A DNA stretch of 64,000 bases from contig NIVC01000800.1 in NCBI GenBank assembly GCA_002269645.1, positions 1 to 64,000 of the forward strand, written 5' to 3'. Source of the DNA: Macrostomum lignano. Taxonomy: Eukaryota. Below, piece after piece: positions 33,394 to 49,303 of this stretch (positions within the stretch are counted from its first letter, which is position 1; each line of letters begins with the position of its first letter). The position numbers and the translations under genes were made by a program. The notes under the pieces are model-generated. The model ran no database searches. It was not told the origin of the DNA and worked only from the letters and a program-made list of their open reading frames with translations.

Positions 33394-35076
33394 ACTAACT
33401 ACTGAATTCACGCCTCAGATTTCACGCCCAAAAATGATGAAACTGAAACAGTGAAAATAAATTAATAAACGATTGCGCAAGTTATATCACCTTTGCGCAC
33501 ACAATCACAGGCCTAAACGTGCTAAAATAAGGGAGAAAAAAAAGTTTTTGTGTTCTTATAATGGAGTGAAAAAGGAGTGATCAAATTTTAATCGCAGCAG
33601 AGATTGCGCATGTATTGAGCTTCTGTAATTTCTATTCACTAATCATTGCGCAACCATGCGTACTAATCCGATTTGATTTATATGTTCTACAAAGTTTGTA
33701 AATATCAATGGAATATTTATAACTTTAACAAAAATAGCACCCATTTAAATTCCGTGCGCAAGACCACTGCAAGGCTCGCCGAGCAGTTGAGGTTGATCAC
33801 TAACTACTGTATATATGGTATGGTATTGGATTCTTCGAACCTGTGTTGCATCATGTGATTAAACACATATTGTCTATTGCATACTTGAGCAATTAAGTGA
33901 GCGTAAATATCACTAAAATTGAAATAATAAATAGTTAGTATGTAGATAGTGATAGCTAATTAGTTAGTAATTAAATAGTAAGTAAATAATGATTGTACTC
34001 TTAGCAATATGATTTACTTTACTTGTGGTTATTCACTTATTCTTAGTACATTATTGCTGAAATGGATCTGCAATGTCACTTTTAGCACAAGAAAGTATGT
34101 ATGTTAGTACAACATGTTGTAAAAGCTTTTCATTATCTATAGACCTACTTATATTAATATTAAGACTCTTCCAATCTTGCCTAGTCTAGCATAACTTGTA
34201 AACTCTCCAAGCACTCATTCGTTGATTTAAATACTACTAAAGCAAAGCATTGCCTATTAAATTACAGTAAATATGAATTCACGATTACATTAAAATAAAT
34301 CAAGAATTCAAGAATTTATAATCAATAATTATAAATATCAATGTTAGACATATATTCTAATGCAGTTTAATATATAGATTAGGGGCCTAGCTATTCTTTG
34401 GCTCCTATCTATATTCATTTGAGTTTAACATGTTATATATGGAGACATCTGCTTTGATAAACAGTGCTCTTGCTTATATAAAGTAATACAGAAAAGCAAT
34501 AGTAGCTAACTTATGCTTATGTTAGCCAATGCCCCCAAATATCCAAATTTTAAACTTCTTTAATATATATAGATTCAATTATGTTTTCAGTGTTTTCATT
34601 GCTAGGCCTAGCCTCTGTCAGGGACCTAAAAGCACAATTGGCATATACTATTTACCACTAAATATTGATTGATTTTATTTTAAACAGTCAGTGCGCTTAG
34701 CATTTAGTTTAGAAAAAGTCAATTTAGCTACTGGCACAATATACATGTTCAATTGTGTTTTCTGTGTTTTCATTGCTAGCCTTTATCAGGGACCTAAAAG
34801 CACAATTGACATATACTATTTACTACTAAATATTGATTGATTGATTTTATTTTAAACAGTCAGTGGGCTTAGCATTTAGTTCATAAAAAGTCAATTTAGC
34901 TACTGGCATAATATACATGTTCAATTGTGTTTTCTGTGTTTTTATTGCTAGCCTTTATCAGGGACCTAAAAGCACAATTGGCATATACTATTTACTACTA
35001 AATATTGATTGATTGATTTTATTTTAAACAGTCAGTGGGCTTAGCATTTAGTTTAGAAAAAGTCAATTTAGCTACT
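33394..35076 (+). repeat. Left TIR: ~1.2 kb unique outer part plus ~3 copies of a 168-172 bp unit
   Basis: Starts ACTAACTACTGAATTCACGCC. Reverse complement of the right end. Unit marker GGGACCTAAAAGCACAATTG at 34621, 34789, 34961. Confidence 0.92.
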
Positions 35077-35509
35077 CTTGAATTTAGACTTCAATTATTT
35101 GCTCACTTTCAAGCTAATTTAATATTGCAAAATATTTGAGTGTTTTAACAAAGTTTACTATATGATTTGAATATTAAAACAAATTGCTTTGATACAAATT
35201 CAATTTTCAAATATTCAATAGTGAATATTTTAAGGATGGCCTATTATATTTTCTAATTATAATATCTTTTAGACAAAATTTGGAATGAATAATAGCAAAA
35301 TGCAATATGTACTTTTTTGTCATAGCCTTCTAATTAGACTGATAAAAGTTTTATACAATTATAGCATTTTGTGCCTTACTTTGCTTTTTATCTGTTATGA
35401 TTACAATTAAATTCCAAACTTATTTAATAACTAACTTAGAGTATTGCAAACTGAAGATTCTATTATTAGTATATATTTTCATTTTTTGAAAATTAGATTG
35501 TTATAGGCC

Positions 35510-36375
35510 TGGCATTACTTGGCATTTACTTGGAAAATGCCATAGGCCTAGGCCTGGCCAAGTAACTGATTACTTGGCATTACCTGGAATTTACTTAGCA
35601 TTAGTTGGCATTTACTTGGCATTACTTGGCATTAGTTGGCATTAGTTGGCATTAGTTGGCAGACACTTGGCATTAGTTGGCATTAGTTGGCACTTACTTG
35701 GCATTAGTTGGCATTAGTTGGCAGACACTTGGCATTAGTTGGCATTAGTTGGCATTAGTTGGCATTAGTTGGCATTTACTTGGCATTAGTTGGCATTAGT
35801 TGGCATTAGTTGGCATTTACTTGGCATTAGTTGGCATTAGTTGGCATTAGTTGGCATTAGTTGGCATTTACTTGGCATTAGTTGGCATTTACTTGGCATT
35901 AGTTGGCATTAGTTGGCAGACACTTGGCATTAGTTGGCATTAGTTGGCAGACACTTGGCATTAGTTGGCATTAGTTGGCATTAGTTGGCAGACACTTGGC
36001 ATTAGTTGGCATTAGTTGGCATTAGTTGGCAGACACTTGGCATTAGTTGGCATTAGTTGGCACTTACTTGGCATTAGTTGGCATTTACTTGGCATTAGTT
36101 GGCATTAGTTGGCACTTACTTGGCATTACTTGGCAGACACTTGGCATTAGTTGGCATTAGTTGGCATTAGTTGGCAGACACTTGGCATTAGTTGGCATTA
36201 GTTGGCATTAGTTGGCATTTACTTGGCATTAGTTGGCATTTACTTGGCATTAGTTGGCATTTACTTGGCATTAGTTGGCATTTACTTGGCATTACTTGGC
36301 AGACACTTAGCATTAGTTGGCATTTACTTGGCAGACACTTGGCATTAGTTGGCATTTACTTGGCATTACTTAACA
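35510..36375 (+). repeat. 10-bp satellite (TTGGCATTAG) arm, left member of a nested inverted pair
   Basis: Unique head TGGCATTACTTGGCATTTACTTGGAAAATGCCATAGGCCTAGGCCTGGCCAAG followed by TTGGCATTAG units with variant units. Confidence 0.92.
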
Positions 36376-47043: not shown

Positions 47044-47383
47044 CTGAAAGTGCGATGTACAGGCTCCATGTTATTCAGACAAAAATGCTTATCAACAAAA
47101 TAACAGCAGCTGTTAGGATGAAGTCCTGCATTTCATCCTAGATTTTCACAGCATCAACTAACCTTCAGCGAATTCTATATGGAACTTAAAACAATGAGAT
47201 AAGAAGCATAGACTATGAAGAAAAATAATTTCATGGCTATCATAACAGCAGGATGAGCTAAAATTTAGCAAATTGTGTACTAAGCATAAATTTAATGGGA
47301 TCTCTTCTATGACGTCATAAGGGACAATGAATGAATAATAATGCATTAAACTTAAAATTTAGTTGAATAACTTAATGTTAATA

Positions 47384-49303
47384 TTTTAGGTCCCTAACAG
47401 AGGCTAGCAATAAAAACAAATGCAGAAAACACAATTGAATCTGTATATTGTGCCAGTAGCTAAATTGACTTTTTCTGAACTAAATGCTAAGCCCACTGAC
47501 TGTTTAAAATAAAATCAATCAATATTTAGTGGTAAATAGTATATGCCAATTGTGCTTTTAGGTCCCTGATAAAGGCTAGCAATGAAAACACAGAAAACAC
47601 AATTGAACATGTATATTGTGCCAGTAGCTAAATTGACTTTTTCTAAACTAAATGCTAAGCCCACTGACTGTTTAAAATAAAATCAATCAATCAATATTTA
47701 GTAGTAAATAGTATATGCCAATTGTGCTTTTAGGTCCCTGATAAAGGCTAGCAATAAAAACACAGAAAACACAATTGAACATGTATATTATGCCAGTAGC
47801 TAAATTGACTTTTTATGAACTAAATGCTAAGCCCACTGACTGTTTAAAATAAAATCAATCAATCAATATTTAGTGGTAAATAGTATATGTCAATTGTGCT
47901 TTTAGGTCCCTGATAAAGGCTAGCAATGAAAACACAGAAAACACAATTGAACATGTATATTGTGCCAGTAGCTAAATTGACTTTTTCTAAACTAAATGCT
48001 AAGCGCACTGACTGTTTAAAATAAAATCAATCAATATTTAGTGGTAAATAGTATATGCCAATTGTGCTTTTAGGTCCCTGACAGAGGCTAGGCCTAGCAA
48101 TGAAAACACTGAAAACATAATTGAATCTATATATATTAAAGAAGTTTAAAATTTGGATATTTGGGGGCATTGGCTAACATAAGCATAAGTTAGCTACTAT
48201 TGCTTTTCTGTATTACTTTATATAAGCAAGAGCACTGTTTATCAAAGCAGATGTCTCCATATAACATGTTAAACTCAAATGAATATAGATAGGAGCCAAA
48301 GAATAGCTAGGCCCCTAATCTATATATTAAACTGCATTAGAATATATGTCTAACATTGATATTTATAATTATTGATTATAAATTCTTGAATTCTTGATTT
48401 ATTTTAATGTAATCGTGAATTCATATTTACTGTAATTTAATAGGCAATGCTTTGCTTTAGTAGTATTTAAATCAACGAATGAGTGCTTGGAGAGTTTACA
48501 AGTTATGCTAGACTAGGCAAGATTGGAAGAGTCTTAATATTAATATAAGTAGGTCTATAGATAATGAAAAGCTTTTACAACATGTTGTACTAACATACAT
48601 ACTTTCTTGTGCTAAAAGTGACATTGCAGATCCATTTCAGCAATAATGTACTAAGAATAAGTGAATAACCACAAGTAAAGTAAATCATATTGCTAAGAGT
48701 ACAATCATTATTTACTTACTATTTAATTACTAACTAATTAGCTATCACTATCTACATACTAACTATTTATTATTTCAATTTTAGTGATATTTACGCTCAC
48801 TTAATTGCTCAAGTATGCAATAGACAATATGTGTTTAATCACATGATGCAACACAGGTTCGAAGAATCCAATACCATACCATATATACAGTAGTTAGTGA
48901 TCAACCTCAACTGCTCGGCGAGCCTTGCAGTGGTCTTGCGCACGGAATTTAAATGGGTGCTATTTTTGTTAAAGTTATAAATATTCCATTGATATTTACA
49001 AACTTTGTAGAACATATAAATCAAATCGGATTAGTACGCATGGTTGCGCAATGATTAGTGAATAGAAATTACAGAAGCTCAATACATGCGCAATCTCTGC
49101 TGCGATTAAAATTTGATCACTCCTTTTTCACTCCATTATAAGAACACAAAAACTTTTTTTTCTCCCTTATTTTAGCACGTTTAGGCCTGTGATTGTGTGC
49201 GCAAAGGTGATATAACTTGCGCAATCGTTTATTAATTTATTTTCACTGTTTCAGTTTCATCATTTTTGGGCGTGAAATCTGAGGCGTGAATTCAGTAGTT
49301 AGT
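47384..49303 (-). repeat. Right TIR: same unique part plus >4 copies of the 168-172 bp unit
   Basis: Ends GGCGTGAATTCAGTAGTTAGT. Unit marker GGTCCCT at 47389, 47561, 47733, 47905, 48073. The identical 61-aa ORF appears at 33673(+) and 48839(-). Confidence 0.92.

What the first reader, a model, noticed from the sequence alone, without database searches (positions are those of the whole stretch)
33394..49303. 15.9-kb Foldback-like autonomous-looking element with kilobase modular TIRs and convergent genes
Seen: TIRs of ~1.7 kb and ~1.9 kb, near-identical wherever compared, enclose a minus-strand transposase-USP gene starting just inside the right TIR and plus-strand ORFs starting inside the left TIR. 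Established: maize MuDR transcribes mudrA and mudrB convergently from TIR promoters, and Drosophila FB-NOF has long modular TIRs. Inference: this is a large, young, multi-gene MULE/Foldback-type element with novel cargo.
Basis: partly seen in the sequence, partly recalled or inferred. Interest (0 to 1): 0.8.

Follow-up and report, generated by a model that had tools for sequence, protein, structure and literature searches.

The report
Giant Rehavkus-type transposon with deubiquitinase domain
This is a real 15.9-kb DNA transposon of the little-studied Rehavkus branch of the Mutator superfamily, in a Macrostomum flatworm genome; its transposase gene is followed by a ubiquitin-protease domain, and this copy lacks the target-site duplication expected of a clean insertion.

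Summary
The arms 33394-35076 and 47623-49303 are inverted repeats of 1683 and 1681 nt, differing by one substitution and one 2-nt indel. Extra 172-bp repeat copies extend the right arm to 47384.

The 805-aa minus-strand ORF is a DDE transposase of the Rehavkus clade of the MULE superfamily. A profile built from six published Rehavkus catalytic domains hits it at E=3.7e-16, and D324, D403 and E638 are conserved. The best PDB fold match of its core is an IS256-family transposase.

A USP (C19) protease domain lies downstream on the same strand. USP-like C-termini recur in related transposases, so it is a lineage feature, not captured cargo.

Two related Macrostomum lignano elements have 1.9-2.7-kb TIRs with subterminal tandem repeats, 9-bp TSDs, a minisatellite in the transposase gene and a convergent second ORF. 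The window's ORF 40054-40821 weakly resembles that second ORF.

Three points count against a clean, active copy:
- There is no TSD.
- A syntenic M. lignano contig lacks 20 kb here, not just the 15.9-kb element.
- No in-frame ATG precedes the conserved N-terminus.

A nested foldback of 10-bp repeats (35510-40069) sits inside. Verdict: a new variant of a known kind, of moderate interest.

The parts
33394..35076 (+). Left terminal inverted repeat. The unique terminal part is 33394-34573. Subterminal 172-bp tandem repeats (2.9 copies) occupy 34574-35076. The terminus reads ACTAACTACTGAATTCACGCC. The terminal 11-mer recurs at 33799 and GAATTCACG recurs near 34276.
47384..49303 (-). Right terminal inverted repeat. 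172-bp repeats (4.3 copies) occupy 47384-48125 and the unique part is 48126-49303. The strict match to the left arm is 47623-49303, 99.8% identical.
44614..47070 (-). Rehavkus-clade DDE transposase reading frame (805-aa ORF 44614-47031; the frame is open from 47070). A zinc-finger-like beta domain with C..C..H lies at about residues 150-207. The catalytic residues are D324 (46060-46062), D403 (45823-45825) and E638 (45118-45120). A GRSH motif at H465 replaces the CxxH of other Rehavkus proteins. The tail, residues 692-805, is not conserved and has low model confidence.
44021..44358 (-). 48-bp minisatellite (7 copies) between the transposase core and the USP domain. It is open in the minus-strand frame and encodes an Ala/Pro/Val/Arg-rich repeat. 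It corresponds to the 'minisatellite in C-term' listed for Rehavkus, and to the 63-bp array in the M. lignano transposase gene.
42569..43698 (-). USP (peptidase C19) domain in two frame segments. The Cys box GLPNTTGKYCAFNAACQCL lies in 43698-43132. The His box SGHYVAY...LND lies in 43102-42569. Canonical GT..AG introns that join the segments in frame exist, for example 43162..43101 (62 nt).
41805..42903 (.). Exact tandem duplication of 551 bp (41805-42355 = 42353-42903). It leaves a second, partial copy of the USP His-box exon downstream of the stop codon.
40054..40821 (+). ORF_B (255 aa), convergent with the transposase. It has a unique N-terminus, a 24-bp minisatellite (40336-40732) encoding EAEESARR repeats, and a basic tail. 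Its N-terminus resembles the second ORF of the M. lignano elements: 28% over 53 aa, pairwise E=1e-5. Its ATG lies inside the last 16 nt of the nested inverted repeat.
35510..40069 (.). Nested foldback structure. The arms are 35510-36407 and 39491-40069. Each arm has about 60 nt of unique end followed by 10/21/31-bp tandem repeats (ATTAGTTGGC, about 80 and 50 copies). The outermost 142 nt are identical between arms. There is no TSD. It encloses 3.1 kb containing ORF_A.
36575..37648 (+). ORF_A (357 aa) inside the nested foldback. It has a unique N-terminus, a 21-bp minisatellite (37156-37564, DEQELGG repeats) and a basic tail RKRRVGRAR. The layout matches ORF_B, but no significant similarity to anything was found.
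29677..49709 (.). The 20-kb block that is replaced by about 12 bp in the syntenic M. lignano contig (L007 3145->3158). It consists of the element plus 3.7 kb of unique left flank and 0.4 kb of right flank.

Best explanation
The segment 33394-49303 is one copy of a cut-and-paste DNA transposon of the Rehavkus clade (Mutator/MULE superfamily), in a Macrostomum lignano-like flatworm genome.

**Shown**
- The minus-strand ORF is homologous to Rehavkus transposases and keeps the D-D-E triad in an RNase-H-like core with a helical insertion domain.
- The arms are near-identical, kilobase-long and modular: a unique end followed by a variable number of 172-bp repeats.
- Related M. lignano elements with the same anatomy are multi-copy and flanked by 9-bp TSDs.

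**Inferred**
- The transposase binds repeated motifs in the TIRs, pairs the ends, and excises and reinserts the element, making 9-bp duplications.
- Transcription of the transposase-USP gene starts in or next to the right TIR. Transcription of an accessory acidic-repeat protein (ORF_B) starts from the other side, MuDR-like.
- The C-terminal USP domain removes ubiquitin from the transposase or from a host factor. This would stabilise the transposition machinery or blunt ubiquitin-dependent silencing or repair signalling.
- This particular copy has been restructured. It carries a nested foldback insertion at or into the 5' end of ORF_B and a 551-bp duplication. Its flanks do not match, most simply because of recombination between two copies or an aberrant or adjacent-deletion event. 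It may therefore no longer be a clean autonomous unit.
For: **Transposase identity**
- An HMM built from the six Rehavkus DDE domains in Dupeyron et al. 2019 (PMC6446971, Additional file 3) scores the window ORF at 65.4 bits, E=3.7e-16 with Z set to 1e6. It scores the ORF's 48 HMMER relatives up to E=3e-51.
- Conserved motifs are DSTG/DATG, DFxW, [C/G]xxH and N/E..VE.W..K.
- Sub-threshold Pfam MULE hits occur in 4 relatives, PHD fingers in 3, Peptidase_C48 in 2 and UCH in 2.
- The core-only AlphaFold model (pLDDT 88, pTM 0.88) has as its best PDB fold matches the ISCth4 (IS256-family) transposase (probability 0.99), then Transib, RAG-like, Hermes and RAG1.

**Related elements in M. lignano**
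- L005 7164-18343 has 2164-nt arms at 99.86% identity, plus 89-bp repeats in 14.7 and 8.2 copies, and the TSD CAATCTTCA.
- L006 4760-18403 has the TSD CCTAGTCAG.
- The two copies are 98.5-99.1% identical to each other.
- Each has a minisatellite in the transposase gene and a convergent ORF2 with a minisatellite.
- ORF_B resembles that ORF2.

**USP domain**
- Pfam UCH scores above its cut-off on the window sequence.
- A profile of four relatives' C-termini hits USP12/USP46 in the PDB at E=1.4e-3.
- A USP-like Cys box is present in 11 of 18 long relatives.

**Literature and locus context**
- A syntenic M. lignano contig lacks the element.
Against: - There is no TSD: CCGCATGTA on the left against CCGGAAGCC on the right, and no shared 9-mer within 300 bp.
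- The syntenic contig lacks 20.0 kb, which is the element plus 4.1 kb of flanks. The junction shows only AATC microhomology and 6 bp of filler, so it is not a clean empty site.
- No other copy of this family's TIR could be looked for, so mobility of this family member is unproven.
- The closest homologue (P0001, 43% identity) has no TIR within 10 kb on either side. Relatives on short Logan/ENA contigs show no TIRs.
- No in-frame ATG lies upstream of the conserved N-terminus. The ATG at 47071 is out of frame by one base.
- The transposase, minisatellite and USP segments are in different frames, and the splicing that would join them is unverified.
- The window's USP has no significant direct similarity to the relatives' USP-like C-termini. 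Only the His box aligns, at E about 0.003-0.02 in a one-target search.
- No PHD finger is present in the element.
Confidence: 0.85

Rival explanations
1. It is a composite. Two separately inserted copies of a non-autonomous TIR or solo-end element sit in opposite orientation and happen to bracket 12.5 kb of DNA. That DNA includes an immobile or decaying transposase gene. The 15.9 kb is not one mobile unit.
For: - There is no TSD at the outer ends.
- The syntenic indel is larger than the element.
- The interior is heterogeneous: a nested foldback and a tandem duplication.
Against: - The arms are 99.8% identical over 1.68 kb and end at exactly the same base.
- The transposase ORF opens about 310 bp from the inner edge of one arm.
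- An ORF2-like gene faces it from the other side. This is the layout of the two TSD-flanked M. lignano elements.
- No solo copy of the arm exists in the other 48 kb of the window or in 90 kb of M. lignano loci.
Confidence: 0.07
2. It is a domesticated or immobilised transposase-derived host gene (transposase-USP) that merely retains old inverted repeats.
For: - The reading frame is intact at 805 aa.
- The closest homologue in M. lignano (P0001) has no TIRs nearby.
- There is no TSD.
Against: - Near-identical kilobase arms are not expected of an old relic.
- The locus is absent from the syntenic contig.
- Related copies in M. lignano are multi-copy, 99% alike and TSD-flanked.
- The region carries fresh structural changes, including a 100%-identical 551-bp duplication.
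Confidence: 0.05
3. It is an assembly artefact: a false inverted duplication or a mis-join through a repeated TIR.
For: - The flanks do not match as a TSD. A mis-join through a multi-copy TIR could produce this.
- The genome is extremely repeat-rich.
Against: - The arms differ in 172-bp repeat number (2.9 vs 4.3 copies), by one substitution and by a 2-nt indel.
- They are separated by 12.5 kb of unique coding sequence.
- The same architecture is seen in an independent assembly at two loci.
- A mis-join could explain the missing TSD, but not the structure itself.
Confidence: 0.03

Closest known systems
Rehavkus DNA transposons (Repbase: Rehavkus-1_TC, -3_TC, -1_HR, -2_NVi, -1_DY, Rehavkus1_AP), treated as a clade or outgroup of the MULE superfamily
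   Same: - The transposase catalytic domain is homologous (profile E=3.7e-16) and shares the DATG / DFSW / N..VE.WF..K motifs.
[quoted passage not shown]
- A minisatellite lies in the 3' part of the transposase gene.
- The element is large (published examples are 4.9-18.5 kb).
- The M. lignano relatives have 9-bp TSDs.
   Different: - This is a divergent sub-lineage. It has GRSH instead of C[AS]AH, and is only about 20% identical to the reference domains.
- No PHD finger is present in this copy.
- The TIRs of 1.7-1.9 kb compare with the 26-412 bp tabulated by Dupeyron et al. Tribolium Rehavkus-like elements can be longer.
- A second convergent ORF is present, whereas the table lists one ORF.
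- A USP domain is present, which the papers I could read do not mention.
- The host is a flatworm, whereas the clade was reported as restricted to arthropods and an annelid.
- This copy has no TSD.
Maize MuDR (Mutator), with mudrA and mudrB transcribed convergently from the TIRs
   Same: - Same superfamily.
- TIRs are long for a DNA transposon.
- There are two convergent genes, a transposase and an accessory protein, one starting next to each TIR.
- TSDs are 9 bp (my knowledge of MuDR, plus for the relatives).
   Different: - MuDR TIRs are about 215 bp and lack tandem-repeat modules.
- MURA has no protease domain.
- ORF_B/ORF2 shows no similarity to MURB.
- Promoter activity in these TIRs is untested.
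Drosophila Foldback (FB/FB-NOF) and other foldback elements (Tetris, Galileo)
   Same: - The inverted termini are kilobase-long and modular, built partly of tandem repeats whose number differs between arms.
- The nested structure 35510-40069 has arms made of 10/21/31-bp repeats, reminiscent of the 10/20/31-bp repeats I recall for FB arms (recalled from memory, not tested here).
   Different: - The outer arms are mostly unique sequence (1.18 kb) with only 3-4 repeat units.
- Relatedness to the NOF protein was not tested.
- Galileo belongs to the P superfamily, which this transposase does not resemble.
Plant KI-MULEs (Kaonashi) and other transposons carrying cysteine proteases (Ulp1/C48 in MULEs, OTU in Helitrons)
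   Same: A ubiquitin-like-modifier protease is carried by a Mutator-superfamily element. Two relatives of this transposase carry Peptidase_C48 instead of USP.
   Different: - Here the protease is a USP (C19) deubiquitinase.
- In the relatives it lies in the same open reading frame as the transposase (P0014, P0009, P0039, P0050).
- In KI-MULEs the ULP domain is usually regarded as captured and is not fused to an active transposase (my knowledge).
IS256-family bacterial transposases (ISCth4 structure, 6xgx)
   Same: It is the best fold match of the predicted catalytic core (probability 0.99). IS256 is the recognised prokaryotic relative of Mutator transposases (my knowledge).
   Different: - TM-scores are low (about 0.3).
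- There is no sequence similarity.
- The bacterial enzymes use a copy-out/paste-in mechanism.
- They have no long TIRs and no accessory domains.

Membership tests
Rehavkus clade (MULE superfamily) | The transposase catalytic domain is homologous to reference Rehavkus transposases, with an intact DDE triad. | tested here: met
   - An HMM of the six published Rehavkus DDE domains scores the window ORF at 65.4 bits, E=3.7e-16 (Z=1e6).
- BLASTP to single references reaches 9e-7.
- D324, D403 and E638 are conserved in the alignment of 49 sequences.
Rehavkus clade (MULE superfamily) | 9-bp target-site duplication | tested here: not met
   - In this copy the flanks are CCGCATGTA and CCGGAAGCC, and no shared 9-mer lies within 300 bp.
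- The feature is met in the two related M. lignano elements: CAATCTTCA and CCTAGTCAG.
Rehavkus clade (MULE superfamily) | [quoted passage not shown] | tested here: met
   The arms are 1683 and about 1920 nt, with 172-bp repeats in 2.9 and 4.3 copies. The definition is taken from bioRxiv 10.1101/2024.12.02.626372.
Rehavkus clade (MULE superfamily) | PHD finger in the transposase | tested here: not met
   - Pfam finds no PHD hit on the ORFs.
- No PHD-type Cys/His pattern occurs in any frame of the element.
- PHD is present in 3 of 48 relatives. The feature may lie in an unrecognised exon or be lost in this sub-lineage.
Rehavkus clade (MULE superfamily) | Minisatellite in the 3' (C-terminal) part of the transposase gene, before the 3' TIR | tested here: met
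   - A 48-bp array of 7 copies lies at 44021-44358, open in the gene's strand, between the DDE core and the USP domain.
- The analogous 63-bp array is in the M. lignano gene.
- The feature is taken from Table 1 of PMC6446971.
Mutator/MULE superfamily in the strict sense (MuDR-like) | Pfam MULE domain (PF10551) above the gathering score; D-D-E with a [C/D]xxH motif | tested here: inconclusive
   - The window ORF has no Pfam hit.
- Four relatives have sub-threshold MULE hits, the best at E=0.002 and 18.9 bits against a cut-off of 27.6.
- The H of CxxH is conserved (H465), but the C is G in this sub-lineage.
- The D2-E spacing of 235 aa is longer than the roughly 180-aa DDE domain quoted for MULEs.
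- The fold search favours IS256-type and other DDE transposases with insertion domains.
hAT superfamily | 8-bp TSD; hAT dimerisation domain; short TIRs | tested here: not met
   - The relatives' TSDs are 9 bp.
- No hAT Pfam domains are found in 49 sequences.
- Hermes is only the 4th fold hit for the core, at E=0.025.
Foldback elements in the strict sense (Drosophila FB/NOF) | Arms composed almost wholly of short tandem repeats; NOF-type coding region | tested here: inconclusive
   - The outer arms are about 70% unique sequence.
- The nested structure 35510-40069 does have arms of 10/21/31-bp repeats.
- No NOF sequence was available to compare.
USP / peptidase C19 deubiquitinases | UCH domain with a Cys box and a His box (catalytic Cys, His, Asp/Asn) | tested here: met
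   - Pfam PF00443 scores 34.8 bits against a cut-off of 23.9, E=1.8e-8.
- The Cys box KYCAFNAACQCL and the His box SGHYVAY...LND are read directly from the translation.
- Catalytic activity is not testable here.

The most novel reading that the evidence does not exclude
Rehavkus-type transposases across animals (flatworm, mollusc, echinoderm and unplaced metagenome-derived eukaryotes) ancestrally carry a C-terminal cysteine protease of the ubiquitin system: USP in most, swapped for Ulp1 in some. On this reading the deubiquitinase is an integral, functional part of the transposition machinery, for example protecting the transposase or the excision site from ubiquitin-dependent turnover, repair signalling or silencing. 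This feature does not appear in the literature I could search. The flatworm sub-lineage would add a conserved acidic-repeat accessory gene and kilobase TIRs. That would make it a three-module system (transposase-DUB, accessory protein, repeat-laden TIRs) that is still active in a regenerative model animal.
Probability: 0.3. Interest if true: 0.6.

Novelty: new variant of a known kind. Interest (0 to 1): 0.42.

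Why it matters
- Rehavkus is one of the least-studied groups of eukaryotic DNA transposons. It is known mostly from a handful of Repbase entries and was reported as restricted to arthropods and one annelid. This result places an apparently intact, very recently homogenised or inserted member in a Macrostomum flatworm. It also shows relatives in a mussel and a sea cucumber.
- The transposase lineage regularly carries a ubiquitin-system protease: USP here, Ulp1 in some relatives. If that domain is functional, it is a direct handle on how a transposon interacts with host ubiquitin signalling.
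- Kilobase TIRs full of tandem repeats are also a plausible seed of the minisatellite and satellite arrays that crowd this genome, as proposed for Tribolium.
- M. lignano is a transgenesis-capable regeneration model. An endogenous active cut-and-paste element there would matter for genome stability in laboratory lines and could serve as a tool.
- None of this is categorically new biology. It extends a known kind.

Tried and rejected
- **Pfam and PDB sequence searches with the 805-aa ORF.** Neither gave a hit.
- **Word-indexed protein search.** It found only one M. lignano homologue.
- **Fold search with the full-length model.** It gave only a weak Hermes hit. Re-folding the core alone was needed.
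- **TSD search.** I tried shifted boundaries, including a terminus at 33401 where ACTGAAT resembles the M. lignano terminus ACTGACAT, and shared 8-10-mers within 300 bp. None was found.
- **Terminal similarity to the M. lignano TIRs.** The first six bases match 5/6, but the 60-nt alignment is not better than shuffles (544 of 2000 reach the score). I do not use it as evidence.
- **Hypothesis that the nested foldback split ORF_B.** Joining 35509 to 40070 gives no extended ORF and no further similarity to the M. lignano ORF2.
- **ORF_A as a paralogue of ORF_B/ORF2.** The similarity is not significant (E=0.056), and there are no tblastx hits once low-complexity sequence is masked.
- **Direct similarity between the window USP and the relatives' C-termini.** BLASTP and phmmer are not significant; only the His box aligns.
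- **TIRs around relatives on Logan/ENA contigs and around P0001.** None was found, but those contigs are short.
- **Empty-site test.** The syntenic M. lignano contig gives a 20-kb difference, not a 15.9-kb one.
- **Rfam and tRNA scans of the window.** Nothing was found.
- **Literature search for a transposase-USP fusion or for Macrostomum Mutator elements.** Nothing relevant was found.

Full report
**1. The observation**

- The arms are 33394-35076 and 47623-49303.
- A global alignment of the arms (1683 vs 1681 nt) shows one substitution and one 2-nt indel.
- Each arm is modular. A unique terminal part of about 1.18 kb is followed by 172-bp tandem repeats, 2.9 copies on the left and 4.3 on the right. 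The right arm therefore reaches 47384, about 1.92 kb.
- The terminal 35-mer occurs only at these two sites in the window, with none expected by chance.
- No other long inverted repeat exists in the window apart from a nested one and a 92-nt pair near 30.3/31.0 kb.
- The arms are AT-rich (31% GC) against 45-47% for the interior.

**2. What lies between the arms**

On the minus strand:
- A frame is open from 47070 to 44617 (805-aa ORF).
- A 48-bp minisatellite follows at 44021-44358.
- Two USP segments follow. One carries a Cys box (GLPNTTGKYCAFNAACQCL, 43698-43132). The other carries a His box (SGHYVAY...LND, 43102-42569). Joined, they score 34.8 bits on Pfam UCH against a cut-off of 23.9.
- The segments are in different frames. 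Canonical GT..AG introns that would join the two USP segments exist, but no RNA data were available.
- An exact 551-bp tandem duplication (41805-42355 = 42353-42903) repeats the last USP exon after the stop codon.

On the plus strand:
- ORF_A runs 36575-37648 and ORF_B runs 40054-40821.
- Each has a unique N-terminus, an acidic minisatellite-encoded repeat and a basic tail.
- Neither starts in the left TIR. No ORF longer than 61 aa lies in either arm.

- Its arms are 35510-36407 and 39491-40069.
- Each arm has a 60-nt unique end followed by about 80 and 50 copies of a 10-bp unit (TRF periods 10, 21, 31). The outermost 142 nt are identical between arms.
- It encloses ORF_A and ends 16 nt inside ORF_B. 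It has no TSD.

**3. Identity of the 805-aa protein**

Pfam and PDB sequence searches found nothing.
- The word-indexed search found one homologue, a Macrostomum lignano hypothetical protein (P0001, 43% identity).
- The exhaustive HMMER search found 48 relatives. The named ones are from M. lignano, the mussel Mytilus coruscus and the sea cucumber Holothuria leucospilota. The rest come from unnamed Logan/ENA/JGI contigs.
- The alignment shows a conserved D (DSTG/DATG), D (DFxW), [C/G]xxH and E (N/E..VE.W..K). In the window protein these are D324, D403, H465 and E638.
- Among the 49 sequences, Pfam finds sub-threshold MULE domains in 4, PHD fingers in 3, Peptidase_C48 in 2 and UCH in 2.

The decisive test used the published alignment of Dupeyron et al. 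2019 (PMC6446971, Additional file 3), which contains the catalytic domains of six Repbase Rehavkus elements.
- Their motifs (LYFDATGS.., YYYA, PV.EM.S..H, TDFSFA, LC.AH, PLWS, N..VE.WF..K) are those of this family.
- An HMM built from the six sequences scores the window ORF at 65.4 bits, E=3.7e-16 with the database size set to a million. It scores the relatives up to E=3e-51.

Structure agrees.
- The full-length AlphaFold model (pLDDT 75) has a four-stranded beta domain at residues 151-200 carrying a C..C..H pattern. That pattern is compatible with the WRKY/FLYWCH-type zinc fingers of MULE transposases; this is inference from the pattern only.
- The core-only model (pLDDT 88, pTM 0.88) finds only DDE transposases as its first nine PDB matches. 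They are led by ISCth4 of the IS256 family (probability 0.99), which to my knowledge is the bacterial relative of Mutator transposases. Transib, a RAG-like transposase, Hermes and RAG1 follow.

The protein is therefore a Rehavkus-clade transposase. It belongs to a divergent sub-lineage in which the CxxH cysteine is glycine (GRSH) in all close members, so this is a lineage trait and not a defect.

**4. The family is mobile and shares this anatomy**

Two M. lignano relatives (P0050 and P0002; P0050 is 25% identical to the window ORF in BLASTP, E=4e-33) lie inside elements with the same architecture.

| Feature | L005 (M. lignano) | L006 (M. lignano) | Window element |
|---|---|---|---|
| Extent | 7164-18343 | 4760-18403 | 33394-49303 |
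| Arm identity | 2164 nt at 99.86% | about 1.9 kb at 99.5% | 1683 nt at 99.8% |
| Subterminal repeats (left / right copies) | 89 bp, 14.7 / 8.2 | 89 bp spacing | 172 bp, 2.9 / 4.3 |
| TSD | CAATCTTCA | CCTAGTCAG | none |

- The two M. lignano copies are 98.5-99.1% identical to each other.
- The L005 copy has a 63-bp minisatellite in the transposase gene. It also has a second ORF, convergent with the transposase and starting about 200 bp from the other TIR, with an 18-bp minisatellite encoding EKQRELEKQQEL repeats and a basic tail. L006 is near-identical over this region.
- The window element mirrors all of these modules.
- The N-terminal unique part of ORF_B aligns to the M. lignano ORF2 just upstream of the repeat in both proteins: 28% over 53 aa, pairwise E=1e-5.

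**5. The USP domain is not cargo**

- Single-ORF relatives have C-termini with a USP-like Cys box (NTCxxDxxL or NxCWLNSTLQ) and a His box (SGHY...W.YD). These are P0014, P0009, P0039 and the M. lignano P0050.
- A profile of four such C-termini finds USP12 and USP46 as its six best PDB matches, at E=1.4e-3 to 0.018.
- Eleven of 18 relatives of at least 850 aa carry the Cys-box motif downstream of the transposase core. Two others carry Ulp1.
- Direct similarity between the window USP and these C-termini is weak. Only the His box aligns. Common descent of the domain is therefore likely but not proven.
- I found no paper describing a USP domain in Rehavkus or MULE transposases. Repbase annotations could not be searched.

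**6. Host and locus**

- A ferritin gene lies at 51868-52359. It is 98% identical to an M. lignano protein.
- The M. lignano contig carrying that gene (L007) is colinear with the window at 92-97% identity on both sides. The window therefore comes from M. lignano or a very close relative, or from another homeologue or haplotype.
- L007 lacks the element, but not cleanly. L007 3145->3158 replaces window 29677-49709. This is 20.0 kb, made up of the element plus 3.7 kb of unique left flank and 0.4 kb of right flank.
- The junction shows only AATC microhomology and 6 bp of filler.
- One deletion in the L007 lineage, possibly an imprecise excision with resection, is the most economical reading. Two or more insertions in the window lineage are not excluded.

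**7. What does not fit**

- This copy has no TSD: CCGCATGTA | element | CCGGAAGCC. Both arms end at the same base.
- The most likely causes are recombination between two copies at different sites, an aberrant or adjacent-deletion transposition event, or an assembly mis-join through a multi-copy TIR. I could not distinguish among them, because no tool searches the host assembly.
- There is no in-frame ATG upstream of the conserved N-terminus. The M. lignano homologue starts MPSASDRDQHVL. The window has an ATG at 47071 that is one base out of frame, and the first in-frame ATG is at 46962. This could reflect a 5' exon, a frameshift or a sequencing error.
- No PHD finger is present.

**8. Mechanism**

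- Shown: the transposase is homologous to Rehavkus transposases, the DDE triad is intact, the TIRs are modular, and sister elements carry 9-bp TSDs.
- Inferred: the transposase binds repeated motifs in the arms. The terminal 11-mer recurs at 33799 and GAATTCACG recurs near 34276, in addition to the 172-bp repeats. It then cuts and pastes the element.
- Inferred: the two gene sets are transcribed convergently from the regions next to the TIRs, as in MuDR.
- Inferred: the USP domain acts on ubiquitin conjugates of the transposase or of host factors.
- The near-identity of the arms means either a very recent insertion or ongoing intra-element homogenisation.

**9. Verdict**

- 'Novel cargo' is wrong.
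- 'Autonomous' and 'young insertion' remain unproven for this copy.
- It is a new variant of a known kind: a flatworm sub-lineage with kilobase TIRs, a USP-bearing transposase and an accessory ORF.
- Interest is moderate.

Noticed in passing
window 1-64000 (e.g. 1523-2814, 15476-16241, 16881-17774, 19777-20864, 26895-28273, 52326-53213, 57742-58412, 61178-62311): The whole window is crowded with minisatellite arrays: at least 25 arrays, with periods of 15-60 bp and lengths up to 1.4 kb, roughly one every 2 kb. Many create long spurious ORFs. Several are conserved in position in the syntenic M. lignano contig L007 but differ in copy number.
   Followed up: partly
window 35510-36407 and 39491-40069: A nested foldback has arms that are arrays of a 10-bp unit (ATTAGTTGGC; TRF periods 10, 21, 31, 41), identical 142-nt outer ends and no TSD. 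It could be an independent foldback-type element inserted into the transposon, or an internal module of it. No other copy was available to decide between these.
   Followed up: partly
window 41805-42903: A 551-bp tandem duplication at 100% identity duplicates the last USP exon. It is a very recent structural change inside the element.
   Followed up: yes
window 29677-49709 vs L007 3145-3158: The syntenic M. lignano contig lacks 20.0 kb here, with AATC microhomology and a 6-bp filler (ACGAGT) at the junction. This looks like an end-joining deletion, possibly an imprecise excision, rather than a clean empty site.
   Followed up: partly
window 51868-52359 (+); 11637-13028 and 20987-21796 (-); 59192-59809 (+): Host genes surround the element.
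- A single-exon ferritin (Pfam E=4e-19) is 98% identical to an M. lignano protein.
- KIAA0319-like exons lie upstream.
- There is a weak B3_4 domain hit.
- By synteny with L007, an LRR gene and a cadherin gene follow.
   Followed up: partly
window 30270-30359 and 30963-31053: A small inverted repeat (92 nt, 91% identity, about 600 bp apart) lies in the unique left flank. It may be a MITE-like insertion.
   Followed up: no
L007 3461-7803 (corresponds to window 50012): The M. lignano contig carries its own 4.3-kb insertion of low-complexity, Ser/Leu-coding repeat sequence. It is absent from the window and sits only 0.7 kb from the element's right end.
   Followed up: partly
L001 10001-12079 (M. 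lignano NIVC01001984.1): The closest homologue of the window transposase (P0001, 43% identity) starts with a proper ATG (MPSASDRDQHVL). It has no TIR, USP or ORF2 within 10 kb on either side. It may be a decayed or domesticated copy.
   Followed up: partly
window 47031-47075 (-): The transposase frame has no in-frame ATG before the conserved N-terminus. An ATG at 47071 is one base out of frame. A GT..AG pair 17 nt apart would restore the frame but is too short for an ordinary intron.
   Followed up: partly
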